NCBI GenBank assembly: GCA_013265495.1
Contig: MU062555.1
Span: 62,001-126,000 of the forward strand
DNA length: 64,000 nucleotides
Direction: 5' to 3'
Source of the DNA: Vicugna vicugna
Taxonomy: Eukaryota
In this document: positions 32,432-43,498 of the stretch, piece by piece
How the letters are laid out: every line of letters begins with the position of its first letter
How positions within the stretch are numbered: the first letter of the stretch is position 1
Translations under genes and position numbers: made by a program
The notes under the pieces: model-generated
The model's database searches: none
What the model was told of the DNA's origin: nothing
What the model saw: the letters and a program-made list of their open reading frames with translations, nothing else

Positions 32432-32437
32432 AATAAA
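32432..32437 (+). terminator. Proximal poly(A) signal of NDOR1
   Basis: AATAAA about 320 nt after the NDOR1 stop. Confidence 0.65.
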
Positions 32438-33018
32438 CGATGGCCTCTGGGTGGCTGCTTCCCACCTGCTCCTCCTGGTGTTGTCAGGGTCCTTAGGTGG
32501 GAGGTGGGCCCACAGCTCACTGCATGGGAATAGCCCACCCAGGGTGGGCACAAGTATACTGCCGCTCAGCCAGGCGCTTTGGTGCTTGATTCTGATGCGC
32601 TGGGGTCCAGCTGTTTGCCCACCTTATACAGGCTCCGCTCTGGCCCCTGCAGCCAAGCAGTGGGAGGCCTGAGGCACCAGGCCAGGGTGCTCCAATCCAC
32701 TGGCCCCAAAACAGAGGCCCTGGGCCCTGGGCGGGGAGGGGCGTGGCCCAAGATGGGGTGCCAGTGGGAGTGGAGTCCCCGCCCCTGGGAGGGGAATTTT
32801 TGTTGGAGAAGTTGGGCGGGCCTACGCACCCTGCCTCCACCTAGAATCGGCTGGCTGGCTGGCAGTCAGTCACTCCCTGACACGCAGATCCCCAAACCTG
32901 GGGCGGGGCTGGGGCAGATCCTGTTGGGGACAGAACACAGGGCCTAGGAGCTGGCCCGGCAGCTGGGGACCAAGTGAAGTTCACGTTGAGTGAGGCTCGA
33001 AGCCAGGAGGAGGCGGCC

Positions 33019-33958
33019 ATTGCTGTAAGGTCAGTGCCAGACCCTGCCCTAGAGGGCCACACTGAACTTCACAGCCTTAACCACCCCCATCGCAGCCCTG
33101 GAGTCCCCGCCCACCCATCCTGACTCCTGCCCTGGGGCTGCCACCCCTGAACTGTGCCCTAGGGCCCCCACTCATGGCCCCACTGACCTCAGCTCTGGGC
33201 TCACCAGTCCGCCTTCGGCCTCTCTGGGCCCTGAGCACCTGGATTCACTGTGCCAGGTGCTGGCAGACGACGGGTTGGACAGCAGGGCCCCTGCGAACCT
33301 CCAGGGTGCCAGGATTCTGGACAGTGAACCCCTGCTGGGGGCAGCAGTCATAGACTGCCCCTGGGCCCCCACAGAGGACGGGGACGAAGACGAGGAGGAG
33401 CAGGCTGGGGAGCAGGGGGAGGAGGAGGAGTGTCCCGTCTGCACAGAGCCCTACCGGTCCGGTGAGCACCAGCTGGCCCTGCTGAACTGCGGTCACAGCC
33501 TGTGTGCAGGCTGCCTGCACCGGCTGCTGGGCGCGGCCCCCAGTGCCGACCTGGGCCGGGTGCGCTGCCCGCTGTGTCGCCAGAAAACACCCATGCTTGA
33601 GTGGGAGATCTGCCGGCTGCAGGAGGAGCTGCTGCAGGCCGACGGGCCCCAGCGCCCCGCGCCCGCTGCTCCCCTCGGGCCCCTCCACGAGAGCCCCGGG
33701 CCCTGGGCCCGCCTAGAGCACCGCTACCAGCTGCACTTCCTGACGAGGCCCCTAGGCGGCCGAGGCTGCCTGCCCTTCCTGCCCTGCCCGCCCTGCCTGG
33801 GTGCCTGGCTCTGGGCCCTGCGGGAACGAGGGCCCTGCGCCCGCCGCATGGCGCTGCTGGGCCTGCTGGCCCTCGAGCTGCTGGGGCTACTGCTCATCTT
33901 CATGCCGCTCATACTGCTGGGGCTGCTCTTCGTGCTGCTGGACGGCTCCAGCCGCTGA
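33019..33958 (+). CDS. Unnamed C3HC4 RING finger protein with C-terminal transmembrane region (RNF183/RNF186/RNF152-like); start uncertain
   Basis: Frame open from 33053 to TGA at 33956-33958. Acidic tract, then CPVC-x15-CGH-x2-C-x2-C-x17-CPLC, then a hydrophobic tail ALLGLLALELLGLLLIFMPLILLGLLFVLL. Proposed structure: 33019-33029 plus 33163-33958, 268 aa if AUU-initiated. No in-frame ATG precedes the RING. Confidence 0.8.
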
Positions 33959-34750
33959 GAAGAGCCCGCCGGGTCTGCCACCAGCACGGCCTGGGCTTGA
34001 GGTAGCCATGGCCACCAACGGATGGGAGGCCCAGACTGGCCCAGGCCCTGGAGCCGTGGGGCCTGATGGCCAGGCTGAAGAACCCAAGGTCGATCAGGGC
34101 ACTAACTTTCAACCCAGACCCAAGCCTCGGACCCAGGGCCACCCAGAAGCCTCTGACCCAGCCGGAGACTCCACACTGCCCTGCTGCCCAGACGCTAGCC
34201 AGTGGTGCCTAAGGACAGCACCAGAGGAGGCCTGTGACCAGGGCCCGAAGTGCCCCTCGAGGGACAGGCCCCATGCTGACACTGGGCTGTCCCCGCTCTC
34301 CAGCCTGGCCTGTCTGCAAGAGGGGCACAGACACCGCGGACACAAAAATGAACAGAGGCCTGGGTCAAGTGCTCGGAGTGGGTGGGGCCCTCAGCAGGCA
34401 CCTGCCCACGTTCCAGCTGAGAGTCAAGTGTGTGTTCCCTGAAGGTCAGGGTAGCCGAGGGGAGGGCCCCTGCTGCACAGGCCCGGCCCACAAAGGGCCT
34501 CCTCTGCCGCCGGGCTGGGGTCCAAGTGGCGGCCCTGAGCAGCCCCAGGGGTGGAGGGGAGTGGCAGCACATGCCCCTCAGCCACAAGGGACCAGGGCGG
34601 GCCCTGGGGCCGAAGGCACCCTCACTCCCCTGCAGCCCCCCATGGCTGAGCCTGGGGCCTTTATTTGAGGGACAGACGCAGTCACAGCACCCCCCTCGTG
34701 GGCTCATTGGTGGCACGCCGAGCCCTGTGCCCGGCACAAGAAATGCTGTC

Positions 34751-35523: not shown

Positions 35524-36321
35524 CTACATGATGGAACAGGCAGACAGCGGGTTCCGCACGTGGCAGGTGCACGCGGCCCCACAGTACTGCCGGAAGGTCT
35601 GGTAGCAACTGCCCTCAGGCTCGCCCCCCCACTGGCCACCGGATGGGGCGGTCAGCGCCTCAGGTGGCAGGCGGCTCAGGATGGACGTGTTGACAGCCAG
35701 CGCAGCCAGGCCGTAGTCAGTGAACAGCACAGTCTCACGGCGGCAGGTGGGACAGGAGATGAACTTGTATTTGGGGCAAGACTCGTAGAGAATCTGCAGG
35801 CACTGCTCACACACAGAGTGCAGGCAAGACAGCACGCGGGGCCGCCGCTGAGTGACGTTGTACGTGTGGCCGCAGGTGGGGCACTCGAGAGGCTCACCTG
35901 CGGCTGATGCCGCTGCTGCTGGGGCCCCTGAGGCAGCAGGGCCAGGCCGAATCACATACTGATTCACGATGACCTCGTCCGCGGGTGCCACTCGGGGGAA
36001 GCCCAGCTCCGCACTGCCCTTGCGGGACCGACGTGGCAGGGGTGGGGTACGGGGCGCCCCTTCCAAGGCAGGCATGTCCCCCCCACATGCCTGGTTGACG
36101 ATGATCTCTGTGTCTGAGGGCCAGGCTCGCTTGGGTGCCAGAGCCGGGGTGGGCCGGGGTGCAGGTGGGAAGCAGGGGGCGGCCGCCTGCAGCTCGGGGA
36201 ACTTCTCAGGGTGGACGATCTTCATGGCCTCCATCTTGAGGATGACATGGGGGCCCTTCAGGCAGGACATGAGGAACCCTGGCCAGCCACTGCCCGCCTC
36301 TGGCCCAGGGTCAGCCGGCAT
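35524..36321 (-). CDS. RNF208: RING finger protein 208, 265 aa, single coding exon
   Basis: MPADPGPEAGSGWPGFLMSCLKGPHVILKMEAMKIVHPEKFPEL...CPTCGHTYNVTQRRPRVLSCLHSVCEQC..CPTCRRET...RNPLSACSIM*. Candidate 5'UTR intron 36521-37055 (GT-AG on minus); ATTAAA on minus at 35378-35383. Confidence 0.97.
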   Translation of the reverse strand: MPADPGPEAGSGWPGFLMSCLKGPHVILKMEAMKIVHPEKFPELQAAAPCFPPAPRPTPALAPKRAWPSDTEIIVNQACGGDMPALEGAPRTPPLPRRSRKGSAELGFPRVAPADEVIVNQYVIRPGPAASGAPAAAASAAGEPLECPTCGHTYNVTQRRPRVLSCLHSVCEQCLQILYESCPKYKFISCPTCRRETVLFTDYGLAALAVNTSILSRLPPEALTAPSGGQWGGEPEGSCYQTFRQYCGAACTCHVRNPLSACSIM

Positions 36322-37450: not shown

Positions 37451-40155
37451 ACCCTGGGTCCTGGTCAAGACCCCCACCCCAGTTCTGGAGGGGAAATCCT
37501 GCTTTGAGGTCTCACAGTGCCAGAGGAAGGAAGGGAAGGAGAGAGTCCAGGGGTGGACCCAGGAAAGCTGGTTCCCAGGACCCCACCCTGGGACTGCCTT
37601 GTGTCCCACCAGAGAGTCAAGGTCTCTGCTTGTCTTTCCACTTGGCCACCAGTGGGAATGCTTCCGGGGCTTTCTGGCTCACAGGTGCAGCGGGGTGTTT
37701 CCAGCGCTGGCAGGCTCCAAGAGGGCAATGGTATGAGCATGAGCAGGGGTGGCATCGAGGGAGTAACAGTGGTTGGGAGCAAGCTCCCAGGGCAGGGCAG
37801 CTGGACAGATGGGTGGTGTGAGAGGTCTGCAGAAGGTCAGACAGTCGGTCAGGCCACCGTCGGCCAGCTCACAGAGGTCACGTACCTACACAGGGTGGGG
37901 TGCCCCTTCTGGCATCTCGTCAGGGCAGCAAGCGCTGGGTTGTCACACAATTGTGTGCTAACCTGACCCCACCCAGCAGAGAGGCCCCATTCCTTTCTGC
38001 TTCCTCCTCAGGCCAGCCTCCCCAGCTCCCTTGGGATATACCCTCTGCCTGTGAGGAGCCCTCAAGTGAGAGGGAGAACATGCTGGCAACTACAGGGCAG
38101 GGGGCCAGGGCTGCAGGGGCCTCTAGAGTGCCTTTTCCTGACCTGCCAGGGCCACCATGTGGCATGCTGGCACTCCTCTGCCTGGCACTGGGCCCTGCAC
38201 CTGACCCTGAACAGCCCCAGCCTCTTCTGGCCACAGCTCCTCTCCTCTGTACAGTCCAAACTGCACCTGGCTAGAGACCTAGCTCCCAGTCCTGCAGAGC
38301 GACAGAGCCCAGAGAGAGATCAGTGTTCCTGATGAAGGGGCCCACTTGGGCTGGAGAGGTAGCCCTCGCCCATAGCGTTTGAATTTGCGGCTCTTTGCAA
38401 CCTCCGGCCTGTGCCTAAGTTTACTCTGCCATTCAGGGAGAGCAGGGGCCTGTGGGAGGGGCGGCGAGGGCCTTATGGGGACCTGGCAGGAAGATAGGGC
38501 AACCGAGGCAGCCCCGGACAGGGGAGGGCCGGGGGTCCAGCCTCCGCCAAGGGCTTTGCTCATCTCATATGCACTCTGGGAACGTATTCAAAGTGGCACC
38601 GGCCACCAGGCCCTACTCCCTGACAGCGGCCCTGCCCCTAGGGATGAGGTCCAGCCCCGTGCAAGCCTCCCGATCCGGGCGTTTCAGAGCTGGGCGGCCC
38701 AAGCCCATCCCGGACGGTCTGAGGCCAGCTGACCCCGAACCGGATCTTTGGGGAAACCGTCGAGCGCGGAGACTTCTGGGGAATAAAGTTCCCACCAGCC
38801 TCCCTCATCCCCAGCCCGATCTGTTTTGCGCATGCGCCAGCCTCCGCCTCCCAACGAGCAGCAGAGTCTGTAGGGGTGGTGGGCGGGGTTTCCGGCGCCT
38901 GCGCAGTGGGCCTCTGTCGCCCGCCTTCTAAGTCCGGGTCTCTCGGCCCGTTTCGCCCCGTATCCGGTGCCCCATCGGTAGAACTTGTGTCCAGACCGGT
39001 CTGACCGGCCCCACACAGGCCACTCTGATCACCTGGCCTCTGGGCCCCGTCTGGTTTGATCCCGCCCTTCCTGGGGGTTCCCCCGCGAGCTCCACGGGTT
39101 AGGGATGTGGGTCCAGGCCGCACCCCACTGCCCCCGTCGCCCCAGAGGGAGCTTACCAGTGCCAGGCCCAAACTCACGTGATCACATCCACTGTCACCCC
39201 CGTCTACAGCGACCCTGTATGGCGCAAGCTATGTGCCACCTTACAGATGAAGGTGGGAGGGGGTGCAAGGGCCAAGGACGGGGATGCTGAGGAGGGACTT
39301 GGGGCCCACGAGCCGACCGCAAAGGGAAACCGTAGTTTCTTATATGAGCTAGAAGCGTCACTTGTGTATGAAGCCCATGTCGCCAATCTTAAGTACGTTT
39401 TATTGGCAAAAGTAAGTAAATCAAACATTTTTTTATCAGTTAAAAAACAGCAAAGCTCCGCGCAGTCTGTTCACAAACACCTTGATCTCTGCCTGCGAGG
39501 TCGAAGCTGTGAGTGACAGTGGGCACCTCTTCCTTCTGCTTCAAAGCAGGGGCTTTGAGGTGTGTGAGTGATGCCCGGGGACCCCAGACGACCTGCGGGC
39601 CTGGACTCTGTGGACCTGACCCCAGTGACCTGCAATCCAGGAGGGCCAGGACATGCCCCAGATGTGTTGAGTCTGAGTCACCCCGAATGGCAATGTCCCT
39701 CAGAGCCCAAGCCTTGGCCACCACCCATCTGAAAAAGGAAGGGTGGGTGGGCACTGTGCTGGAAGAGCTGGGCCTCCTGGGATCTTGGGAACCCTGTCTG
39801 GGAGCCCCGCCCATGGCCCCGCCCCTCCCCAGTAGGGAAAAGGCAGCAGCCAGTCCCTCAGCTCACAGACACTGGGACCTGGCCCAGAGGACAAGAGGAC
39901 TCCTTGCTACCATCACCACTTCAGGTGAGTCCTGAGCTGAGGGGCTCCCCCCACCCACCCAGGACCAGCTTAGCTGCATCTTCCAGCCTCCCCCACCCCA
40001 ACCCAGCTCCATCGCAAGGCACTGCCTCTCAGGGAAGGCAGAGGACCCCTGGGGCACAGCTGGGAGACACTTGCCTCCTTGCACATGCACTGACACACAG
40101 ACCTTGAACACTCTTGGCATTTCCACAGCCTCTGCCACCCCTGCCAGGCTGGGCC

Positions 40156-40545
40156 ATGGACCCCCACAACATGATGGTCAAGAACCCATATGCCCACATC
40201 AGCATCCCGCGGGCTCACCTGAGGCCTGACCTGGGGCAGCAGCTGGAGGCGGCTCCATTCTCCTCAGAGTCGCAGCCTGTGCCTCTGGGGCCCTGCACCC
40301 TGGAACCCGCCAAGGAGGCCCCAGGGTCCAAGGGGGCCAATTCCATCCAGGGCCAGCAGGCCTGGCAGCCACCCGGCAACCCCTGCAGCAGTGGGCAGCG
40401 CCCGGCAGGACTGACATATGCGGGCCTGCCGCCAGTTGGGCACGGCGACGACATCGCTCACCACTGCTGCTGCTGTCCCTGCTGCTCCTGCTGCCACTGC
40501 CCCCGCTTCTGCCGCTGCCACAGCTGCTGCTGTGTCGTCTCCTAG
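40156..40545 (+). CDS. CYSRT1: Cysteine-rich tail protein 1, 129 aa
   Basis: [31 protein letters not shown]...[32 protein letters not shown]. Candidate 5'UTR intron 39925-40128; AATAAA 40822-40827; AP-1 site TGAGTCA 39674-39680 upstream. Confidence 0.96.

Positions 40546-42955: not shown

Positions 42956-43498
<543 letters not shown>

What the first reader, a model, noticed from the sequence alone, without database searches (positions are those of the whole stretch)
32880..33958. Hidden RING-transmembrane E3 ligase gene with no in-frame AUG: candidate AUU-initiated protein
Seen: an intact C3HC4 RING plus hydrophobic C-tail. The frame is open from 33053, and its first in-frame ATG lies after the RING (the track's start at 33257 is a GTG). 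A strong donor AAG|GTCAGT (33029/33030) and an acceptor ccctag|G (33162/33163) define a 133-nt intron. Splicing places GCGGCC-ATT-G (33019-33021; G at -3, G at +4) in frame: (I/M)AVRAPTHGPTD..., 268 aa. The exon-1 frame stays open back to 32881 without an ATG, and GC boxes lie at 32730-32910. An out-of-frame ATG at 33174 opens a 59-codon ORF ending at 33353. Inference, three options: non-AUG initiation; an ATG>ATT start loss or base error in this genome; or a frameshift that detached the 33174 ATG. I recall a recently added, still unnamed RING-like locus at this position in human, so the gene may not be wholly new; the start-codon problem is the part worth testing.
Basis: partly seen in the sequence, partly recalled or inferred. 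Interest (0 to 1): 0.85.

Follow-up and report, generated by a model that had tools for sequence, protein, structure and literature searches.

The report
RING membrane ligase gene, likely CUG-initiated
This is the alpaca copy of an already-predicted but unstudied RING-finger membrane protein gene between NDOR1 and RNF208; placental mammals in general lack a normal ATG start for it, and comparison of 12 species points to a conserved CTG codon at 33098 as the start, not the ATT at 33019.

Summary
The window is alpaca. NCBI already models this gene as "ring finger protein-like, partial", using the same 33029|33163 splice and no start codon.

The missing ATG is not an alpaca defect. Nine of 12 placental orthologues have no in-frame ATG between the upstream stop and the RING. 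Ten marsupials start at an ATG that aligns within about three codons of alpaca 33098.

The evidence favours the in-frame CTG at 33098-33100 as the start:
- **Conservation:** it is kept, with a purine at -3 and G at +4, in 11 of 12 placentals. The twelfth, tamandua, has lost it and carries an in-frame ATG in strong context 26 codons upstream.
- **Frame:** in a codon-blind nucleotide alignment, all 16 gap events from the CTG to the RING are multiples of three. In the 300 nt upstream the counts are 16:23:20, and the last frame-breaking gap ends 8 nt before the CTG.

The ATT at 33019 and the acceptor at 33162 are not conserved, and the proposed intron would remove the CTG.

The predicted product is 286 aa: a disordered N-terminus, a C3HC4 RING and a C-terminal membrane anchor.

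Non-AUG initiation is therefore supported, but at a different codon. This would be a new member of a known kind.

The parts
32783..32818 (+). Conserved promoter-like block: a CCCCGCCCC GC box followed by a GGGGAATTCC-like motif and CTGTTGGAGGAGT, about 300 nt upstream of the candidate start
   Evidence: Alignment of 8 placentals; also present in the rodent and shrew loci. Its function is inferred, not tested.
33019..33021 (+).
   Evidence: Alpaca-specific. The aligned bases in the other species give GTT, CTG or CCG. It lies in a region whose indels do not preserve the frame.
33027..33036 (+). AGGTCAGTG(C), a 5' splice-site-like motif kept in the placentals examined (variant in rodentX); purpose unresolved
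   Evidence: GGTCAGT found in 11 of 12 loci, with rodentX reading GGTTAGT and GGTCAAG in a duplicated copy. It forms an inverted repeat with CACTGACCT about 30 nt downstream in most species, without covariation.
33030..33162 (+).
   Evidence: The acceptor AG is present only in alpaca and bear. The interval contains the conserved CTG and 21 further codons that stay in frame across species.
33092..33101 (+). Candidate initiation site gcagcc-CTG-g: CTG at 33098-33100, G at -3, G at +4
   Evidence: CTG (TTG in tenrec) with R at -3 and G at +4 in 11 of 11 aligned placentals. No other in-frame column before the RING has more than 3 species in strong context.
33098..33958 (+). Proposed single-exon coding sequence: 286 codons plus TGA
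   Evidence: Open frame. All 16 gap events from the CTG to the RING are multiples of 3. dN/dS from the RING to the end is 0.19-0.62.
33098..33430 (+). N-terminal region of 111 codons: weakly constrained and predicted disordered
   Evidence: dN/dS 0.32-1.29. AlphaFold pLDDT about 30 for residues 9-106.
33431..33577 (+). C3HC4 RING finger, Cys112 to Cys160 of the 286-aa protein
   Evidence: Pfam RING models score above their cut-offs. All eight ligand positions are invariant in 22 sequences. PDB sequence hits to the TRIM32, TRIM21 and NOT4 RINGs.
33848..33940 (+). C-terminal hydrophobic helix, residues 251-281, followed by five residues (tail anchor)
   Evidence: Highest Kyte-Doolittle 19-mer is 2.96, at residues 261-279. 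AlphaFold predicts helix 246-285 with pLDDT 84-96.
33174..33353 (+). Out-of-frame ATG and its 59-codon ORF; incidental
   Evidence: The ATG is the overlap of in-frame CAT-GGC. It is present in whale and bear and absent in yak, horse, gibbon and beaver.

Best explanation
The locus is the alpaca orthologue of the vertebrate "ring finger protein-like" gene, which sits between NDOR1 (same strand, upstream) and RNF208 (opposite strand). It is a single-coding-exon gene for a 286-aa protein with a disordered N-terminus, a C3HC4 RING and a C-terminal tail anchor. The protein is presumably a membrane-bound E3 ubiquitin ligase with a cytosolic RING.

In placental mammals the ancestral AUG, which marsupials still have, has been lost. 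I propose that translation starts at the in-frame CUG at 33098-33100, in the context gcagccCUGg, decoded by initiator tRNA as Met.

Shown here: the gene's identity and synteny; the placental-wide lack of an in-frame ATG; conservation of the CTG and its context; and the switch to frame-preserving evolution at that codon.

Inferred, not shown: that ribosomes actually initiate there; that the mRNA is unspliced across 33030-33162; and E3 ligase activity.
For: 1. **Identity and synteny.** 100% match to XP_072815108.1. Orthologues in whale, yak, horse, bear, beaver, tenrec, gibbon, shrew, tamandua and armadillo all lie just downstream of NDOR1 and upstream of a 244-274-aa gene on the opposite strand. 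That neighbour is RNF208 in the window.
2. **No in-frame ATG before the RING** in alpaca, whale, yak, bear, beaver, tenrec, gibbon, shrew and armadillo. In-frame stops lie 16 codons (alpaca) and 10 codons (armadillo) upstream of the CTG.
3. **Conservation of the start site.** CTG or TTG with R at -3 and G at +4 in 11 of 12 placentals. It is the only such in-frame column before the RING. In armadillo it is the only in-frame near-cognate for 33 codons after the stop.
4. **The exception fits.** Tamandua has CCC at the site and in-frame ATGs 26 and 17 codons upstream, the first in strong context.
5. **Frame preservation.** In a codon-blind MAFFT alignment, 16 of 16 gap events between the CTG and the RING are 3n, against 16:23:20 upstream (Fisher p = 7e-8). 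Seven of seven are 3n if the acidic repeat is left out. The last non-3n gap ends 8 nt before the CTG.
6. **Marsupials.** Ten species, all 232 aa, start MA(V/M)GSQEPEP. This aligns to the placental (V/I)A(T/A)LGS(P/Q)P within 0-3 codons.
7. **Protein-level check.** Leu occupies this position in most of the placental cluster-representative models that span it: 41 by pattern match plus about a dozen by eye.
8. **Out-of-frame ATGs** appear from +49 nt onward in several species. A much later start would put them ahead of it.
Against: - I have no transcript, ribosome-profiling or peptide evidence.
- The N-terminal 111 codons are only weakly constrained. dN/dS is 0.9-1.3 within cetartiodactyls and codon-position bias is nearly flat.
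- Leu is often encoded by CTG in GC-rich genes, so conservation of the codon alone is weak evidence.
- The GGTCAGT motif 70 nt upstream looks like a splice donor, and I cannot say what it does.
- ATG depletion in the leader is marginal once compared with the reverse-complement control: 5 ATG against 12 CAT upstream, 23 against 15 downstream, p = 0.04, and the species are not independent.
- DNA was available for only 12 placentals and one marsupial, and for no other camelid.
Confidence: 0.6

Rival explanations
1. The reader's model, which is also NCBI's partial model. Exon 1 ends at 33029 and splices to 33163, and translation starts at AUU 33019 to give a 268-aa protein.
For: The donor-like AG|GTCAGT is kept in the placentals examined. 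The alpaca AG at 33161-33162 is preceded by a pyrimidine-rich stretch. NCBI's model uses this junction. The ATT has G at -3 and G at +4.
Against: The ATT is alpaca-specific, and the acceptor AG is found only in alpaca and bear. The intron would delete the conserved CTG and 21 further codons that stay in frame in all species. Exon-1 sequence evolves with frame-breaking indels. Orthologue models use non-homologous N-termini, so this junction is not a shared feature. From general knowledge, AUU is among the weaker near-cognates.
Confidence: 0.04
2. Translation starts further downstream, at one or several near-cognates close to the RING. Candidates are GTG 33257, CTG 33260 and CTG 33335. On this reading the region 33098-33250 is 5' leader and the product is about 200-230 aa, like the human 201-aa and Kogia 193-aa models.
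For: Primates, lemurs, hedgehog and Kogia have acquired in-frame ATGs 18-60 codons before the RING. The N-terminal region is weakly constrained. CTG 33260 has a strong context in alpaca, whale, yak and bear.
Against: Frame-preserving indels begin at 33098, not later. No downstream near-cognate is conserved in strong context in more than 3 of 11 species. Out-of-frame ATGs at +49 to +76 nt in bear, beaver, alpaca and whale would capture scanning ribosomes before a later start.
Confidence: 0.1
3. A conventional AUG lies in an unrecognised upstream exon, for example an alternative NDOR1-linked or intergenic exon, that is spliced in frame onto the RING exon.
For: NDOR1 ends only about 650 nt upstream on the same strand (AATAAA at 32434). 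The in-frame TAG at 33050-33052 could double as an acceptor AG, and similar YAG|(A)GGGCC sites exist in whale, bear and beaver. I could not examine any RNA data.
Against: Between 33053 and 33090 the frame is not conserved: there are 1-, 2-, 4- and 6-nt indels. Armadillo has an in-frame stop 10 codons before the CTG. There is no conserved AG within 8 nt upstream of the CTG. In marsupials the ATG sits in this same exon, with an in-frame stop 3 codons upstream.
Confidence: 0.08
4. The camelid copy is losing function. The frame is still open but the gene is no longer translated, or is under relaxed selection, so the missing start needs no special mechanism in alpaca.
For: Alpaca-lineage substitutions in the RING-to-end region are 12 nonsynonymous to 5 synonymous. 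The other eight species pooled give 96:105. Alpaca comparisons give the highest core dN/dS, 0.36-0.62.
Against: The difference is not significant (p = 0.08). All eight RING ligands, the conserved juxtamembrane Cys-Pro motif and the anchor are intact over 286 codons with no stop or frameshift. The start-codon situation is the same in species under clear purifying selection. RNA-Seq libraries of a close relative hold 32-45% of the sampled words of the stretch.
Confidence: 0.08

Closest known systems
"Ring finger protein-like" orthologous group (NCBI Gnomon models in mammals, birds and reptiles; some marsupial entries are named RING finger protein 225 or 225-like)
   Same: The window is 100% identical to the alpaca entry. 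Synteny is the same (NDOR1, this gene, RNF208), as are the RING, the EWEICxLQEELL helix, the CLPFLPCPPCLG motif and the C-terminal anchor.
   Different: None in kind; the window's gene is a member. What this work adds is that the placental models carry arbitrary, non-homologous N-termini, or are marked partial, because no AUG exists. A conserved CUG fits the data better.
RNF224 and RNF208, the neighbouring RING genes in the same 11-kb cluster
   Same: RING-HC domains of the same subtype: 32% identity over 73 aa to RNF224 (E 2e-9) and 33% over 57 aa to RNF208 (E 1e-8).
   Different: Similarity is confined to the RING. Both neighbours start at ATG in the window and lack this gene's C-terminal 31-residue hydrophobic helix.
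Tail-anchored RING E3 ligases such as RNF183, RNF186, RNF152, RNF182 and RNF225 (architecture recalled from general knowledge; several database names for orthologues point to them)
   Same: A cytosolic RING plus a single C-terminal transmembrane helix. Sources name some orthologues RNF183-like, RNF182 or RNF225-like.
   Different: This gene is not orthologous to any of them, since it sits at a different locus. It has a disordered N-terminal region of about 110 residues ahead of the RING. As far as I know, those genes use AUG starts.
Mammalian genes translated only from a non-AUG codon: EIF4G2 (GUG), TRPV6 (ACG), STIM2 (UUG), TEAD1 (AUU)
   Same: There is no in-frame AUG for the conserved coding sequence, and a near-cognate codon in good context is conserved. 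More than 60 non-AUG proteoforms have been reported (PMC9789052).
   Different: Those cases have experimental support, whereas this one rests on comparative sequence only. Here the outgroup (marsupials) still has the AUG, so the switch can be placed on the placental stem.
RNF228 (HGNC:55809), a recently named single-exon RING gene
   Same: Another RING gene added late to the human catalogue, on PhyloCSF and Ribo-seq support (PMC12807706).
   Different: A different locus. A deletion table places RNF228 in 2q36 beside PAX3 (PMC12549294), not next to NDOR1 and RNF208.

Membership tests
RING-HC (C3HC4) zinc finger | Eight ligands in the order C-x2-C ... C-x-H-x2-C-x2-C ... C-x2-C | tested here: met
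   CPVC...NCGHSLCAGC...CPLC at residues 112-160. All ligand columns are invariant in 22 sequences. Pfam zf-RING_5, zf-RING_2, zf-RING_UBOX, zf-C3HC4_3 and zf-C3HC4 all score above their cut-offs.
RING-HC (C3HC4) zinc finger | E2-dependent ubiquitin ligase activity | not testable with these tools
   Inferred from the domain only.
Tail-anchored membrane protein | A single hydrophobic helix within about 30 residues of the C-terminus and no N-terminal signal peptide | tested here: met
   Hydrophobic run at residues 251-281 of 286, KD 2.96. AlphaFold helix 246-285 at pLDDT 84-96. The N-terminal 19-mer has KD -0.6. No dedicated topology predictor was run.
"Ring finger protein-like" orthologous group | Position between NDOR1 and RNF208, and full-length similarity to the group | tested here: met
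   Gene order in 10 placental loci and in the window. Identity to placental members is 61-100%.
Genes initiated only at a non-AUG codon | No in-frame AUG upstream of or within the start of the conserved coding sequence | tested here: met
   Nine of 12 placentals have none between the upstream stop and the RING.
Genes initiated only at a non-AUG codon | A near-cognate codon conserved in favourable context (purine at -3, G at +4) | tested here: met
   CTG or TTG in 11 of 12 species, all with R at -3 and G at +4; this is the only such column.
Genes initiated only at a non-AUG codon | The coding signature begins at that codon | tested here: met
   Gap lengths are 16 of 16 multiples of 3 downstream and 16:23:20 upstream, with the boundary 8 nt before the CTG. 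The dN/dS support is weaker: 0.32-1.29 in the first 111 codons.
Genes initiated only at a non-AUG codon | Direct evidence of initiation (ribosome profiling, N-terminal peptide or mutagenesis) | not tested
No Ribo-seq or proteomics tool is available.
   The ATT is alpaca-only. The acceptor AG is in alpaca and bear only.

The most novel reading that the evidence does not exclude
Placental mammals lost the ancestral AUG of this tail-anchored RING ligase about 100 million years ago and have since made the protein only from a CUG. The conserved leader element 70 nt upstream (AGGTCAGTG, which pairs with CACTGACCT) acts as a regulatory RNA hairpin or U1-binding site that sets how much initiation the CUG receives. 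That would tie the ligase's abundance to start-codon stringency or to stress.
Probability: 0.12. Interest if true: 0.75.

Novelty: new member of a known kind. Interest (0 to 1): 0.55.

Why it matters
If the CUG start is real, this is one more mammalian gene made only from a non-AUG codon. It is unusual in that the AUG-to-non-AUG switch can be placed on the placental stem, because marsupials keep the AUG.

The result also has a practical use. Dozens of automatic gene models for this locus carry unrelated, invented N-termini or are flagged partial. A single conserved start would give one consistent protein of about 270-286 aa across placentals.

It further defines the full-length product of an uncharacterised membrane RING ligase in the NDOR1-RNF208-RNF224 cluster, which any functional study of that protein would need.

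Tried and rejected
- **RNA-seq.** The look-up of sequencing runs found alpaca runs holding 96-99% of the sampled words, and RNA-Seq runs of a close relative (several labelled reproductive system) holding 32-45%. I therefore have no junction or 5'-end data.
- **Logan contigs of a rodent orthologue (L009-L016).** These are colinear with genomic sequence, promoter included, so they say nothing about splicing.
- **RNF228 as the human counterpart.** Rejected, because it maps to 2q36. Literature searches for the NCBI gene name and for the three neighbours gave nothing on this gene.
- **ATG depletion in the leader.** It looked strong against mononucleotide shuffles: 4 observed against 30 expected. 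Most of that disappears against the reverse-complement control, 4 ATG against 9 CAT. With 11 species the result is marginal, p = 0.04, and I treat it as weak.
- **The hairpin AGGTCAGTG / CACTGACCT.** RNAalifold predicts it, but there is no covariation. The 3' arm is lost in gibbon, shrew and tamandua and has a mismatch in alpaca.
- **A small stem just after the CTG.** It is weak (-6.7 kcal/mol) and not at the spacing known to help non-AUG starts.
- **Rfam.** Nothing near a gathering score.
- **A second search with the opossum N-terminus.** It found no monotremes and no further marsupial clusters.
- **Human DNA.** I did not fetch it.

Full report
**What is there.**
- The RING frame is open from 33053 to TGA 33956-33958, and its first in-frame ATG (33593) lies after the RING.
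- 33257 is GTG.
- AAG|GTCAGT lies at 33029/33030 and ccctag|G at 33162/33163.
- ATT 33019-33021 has G at -3 and +4.
- ATG 33174 is out of frame.
- Pfam RING models score above their cut-offs.
- The C-terminal 31 residues are strongly hydrophobic.

**Identity.** A protein search returns a 100% match to "ring finger protein-like, partial [Vicugna pacos]", XP_072815108.1, 314 aa. The window is therefore alpaca, and the gene is already predicted, but as 5'-incomplete.

Orthologues are annotated in many mammals, birds and reptiles. In ten placental loci the gene lies directly downstream of NDOR1 on the same strand, and upstream of a 244-274-aa gene on the opposite strand. In the window that neighbour is RNF208 (35524-36320, minus strand), followed by CYSRT1 and RNF224. 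The RING is 32-33% identical to those of RNF224 and RNF208.

RNF228, a recently named single-exon RING gene, is at a different locus, 2q36. I found no paper on this gene.

**The missing ATG is placental-wide.** I walked the RING frame back to its upstream stop in each locus.
- Alpaca, gray whale, yak, bear, beaver, tenrec, gibbon, shrew and armadillo have no in-frame ATG before the RING.
- Horse has one 183 nt upstream of the site discussed below.
- A rodent has one 5 codons after that site, in weak context.
- Tamandua has two just upstream of it.

The automatic models for these species have unrelated N-termini: far-upstream ATGs, ad hoc splices, or ATGs that arose near the RING in some lineages, such as the human 201-aa and Kogia 193-aa models. 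This rules out an alpaca-specific ATG>ATT loss or an assembly error as the cause. Independently, six alpaca runs from two studies hold 96-99% of the sampled 31-mers of 32850-34100.

**Where coding begins.** A nucleotide alignment shows an in-frame CTG at alpaca 33098-33100 (gcagcc-CTG-g). It is matched by GCC(A/G)CC-CTG-G in whale, yak, horse, bear, beaver and gibbon. Close variants occur in shrew, armadillo and the rodent, and tenrec has TTG.

Scoring every in-frame codon column from there to the RING, this is the only one where all 11 aligned species have a near-cognate with a purine at -3 and G at +4. No other column exceeds 3 species.

The strongest evidence is the indel pattern in a codon-blind MAFFT alignment of 11 placentals.
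- All 16 distinct gap events between the CTG and the RING are multiples of three.
- Seven of seven are multiples of three if the acidic repeat is set aside.
- The 59 gap events in the 300 nt upstream split 16:23:20 by length mod 3 (Fisher p = 7e-8).
- The last frame-breaking gaps end 8 nt before the CTG. They include a 1-nt gap in yak, horse and shrew.

The conserved reading frame therefore starts at about 33090, and the CTG is the only near-cognate codon available there. In armadillo an in-frame stop lies 10 codons upstream, and the CTG is the only in-frame near-cognate for the next 33 codons.

Tamandua is the one species in which the CTG has become CCC. It has in-frame ATGs 26 and 17 codons upstream, the first in strong context. 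That looks like a replacement start.

At the protein level, Leu occupies this position in most of the placental cluster representatives that span it.

**Outgroup.** Ten marsupial orthologues are all 232 aa and begin MA(V/M)GSQEPEP. In opossum an in-frame stop lies 3 codons upstream of the ATG. Protein and DNA alignments place this ATG within 0-3 codons of the placental CTG. Divergence is too great to fix the exact codon. The simplest history is that the therian ancestor started here with AUG and the placental stem lost it.

- The ATT is alpaca-specific. The other species read GTT, CTG or CCG there.
- The acceptor AG exists only in alpaca and bear.
- The exon-1 region evolves with frame-breaking indels.
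- The intron would delete the conserved CTG plus 21 further in-frame codons.
- ATG 33174 is the overlap of in-frame CAT-GGC (Thr-His-Gly-Pro). It is out of frame in whale and bear as well.

NCBI's junction is best read as a device to keep a protein alignment in frame. I could not check that against reads.

**Selection and structure.** From the RING to the stop, dN/dS is 0.19-0.62. In the first 111 codons it is 0.32-1.29, with little codon-position bias. The N-terminus is therefore only weakly constrained in sequence, although its frame is kept.

AlphaFold, run with a 22-sequence alignment, gives pLDDT of about 30 for residues 9-106 and 66-81 for the RING. It predicts a helix after the RING and a confident C-terminal helix, residues 246-285 at pLDDT 84-96.

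Alpaca-lineage changes in the core are 12 nonsynonymous to 5 synonymous, against 96:105 elsewhere. This hints at relaxed constraint but is not significant, p = 0.08.

**Unresolved.** GGTCAGT at 33028-33034 is kept in 11 of the 12 placentals; the rodent reads GGTTAGT and GGTCAAG in a duplicated copy. It resembles a 5' splice site with an unusual C at +3. It is also the 5' arm of an inverted repeat, AGGTCAGTG with CACTGACCT. RNAalifold folds this as a 10-bp stem, but without covariation, and the 3' arm is lost in three species.

A conserved GC box plus a GGGGAATTCC-like block at 32783-32818 looks like the promoter.

Evidence for ATG depletion in the leader is marginal once a reverse-complement control is applied.

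**Limits.** DNA was available from 12 placentals and one marsupial, and from no other camelid.

**Verdict.** Non-AUG initiation is the best reading, but at CUG 33098 (confidence about 0.6) rather than at AUU 33019 with a 133-nt intron. Exclusive non-AUG initiation is a known phenomenon: EIF4G2, TRPV6, STIM2 and TEAD1 are examples, and more than 60 proteoforms have been reported (PMC9789052). This would therefore be a new member of a known kind. Its particular value is a datable AUG loss and an immediate use in correcting annotation.

Noticed in passing
window 33027-33068: AGGTCAGTG is kept in 11 of the 12 placental loci (variant in the rodent). It is the reverse complement of CACTGACCT about 30 nt downstream. 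Alpaca has one mismatch (CACTGAACT), and the 3' arm is lost in gibbon, shrew and tamandua. It could be a splice donor, a U1 site, a leader hairpin or a DNA motif.
   Followed up: partly
window 32783-32818: A GC box (CCCCGCCCC) followed by a GGGGAATTCC-like motif and CTGTTGGAGGAGT is conserved across placentals in otherwise poorly conserved intergenic DNA. It is probably this gene's core promoter, only about 350 nt after the NDOR1 AATAAA at 32434.
   Followed up: partly
orthologue models P0010, P0011, P0013, P0029, P0034, P0073 and others: Automatic gene models for this locus in different mammals have mutually non-homologous N-termini or are flagged partial. The whale model even uses the AG inside GGTCAG as an acceptor. 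This looks like a systematic annotation artefact of forcing an ATG.
   Followed up: partly
window 33431-33955: The alpaca lineage has 12 nonsynonymous and 5 synonymous derived changes in the conserved core, against 96:105 in eight other species. This may reflect relaxed constraint in camelids but is not significant (p = 0.08).
   Followed up: partly
window 33128-33154 and the aligned loci: The same 27-nt (9-codon) segment, around PELCPG, is absent in bear, shrew, beaver, the rodent and armadillo. These species are not a clade, so this is a recurrent in-frame indel at a short internal repeat.
   Followed up: no
window 35524-36320 (-), 40114-40545 (+), 43028-43498 (+): RNF208, CYSRT1 and RNF224 follow in the order expected for the region syntenic with human 9q34.3. 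The three RING genes share only their RING domains.
   Followed up: partly
runs X7, X25-X36: Confirmed RNA-Seq libraries of a close relative, several of them labelled reproductive system, hold 32-45% of the sampled words of 32900-33960. This hints that the locus is transcribed in reproductive tissue.
   Followed up: no
L018:1501-1560 (tamandua): Tamandua has lost the CTG (now CCC) and has gained in-frame ATGs at 1501 and 1528. Its xenarthran relative, the armadillo, keeps the CTG and has no ATG.
   Followed up: yes
human and primate models P0044, P0020, P0050 versus gibbon L008: Anthropoid primates have an in-frame ATG (MEGAWALP) about 26 codons before the RING, and gibbon has GTG there. The human sequence also differs beside the RING histidine, reading CSHGLC where others read CGHGLC.
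   Followed up: no
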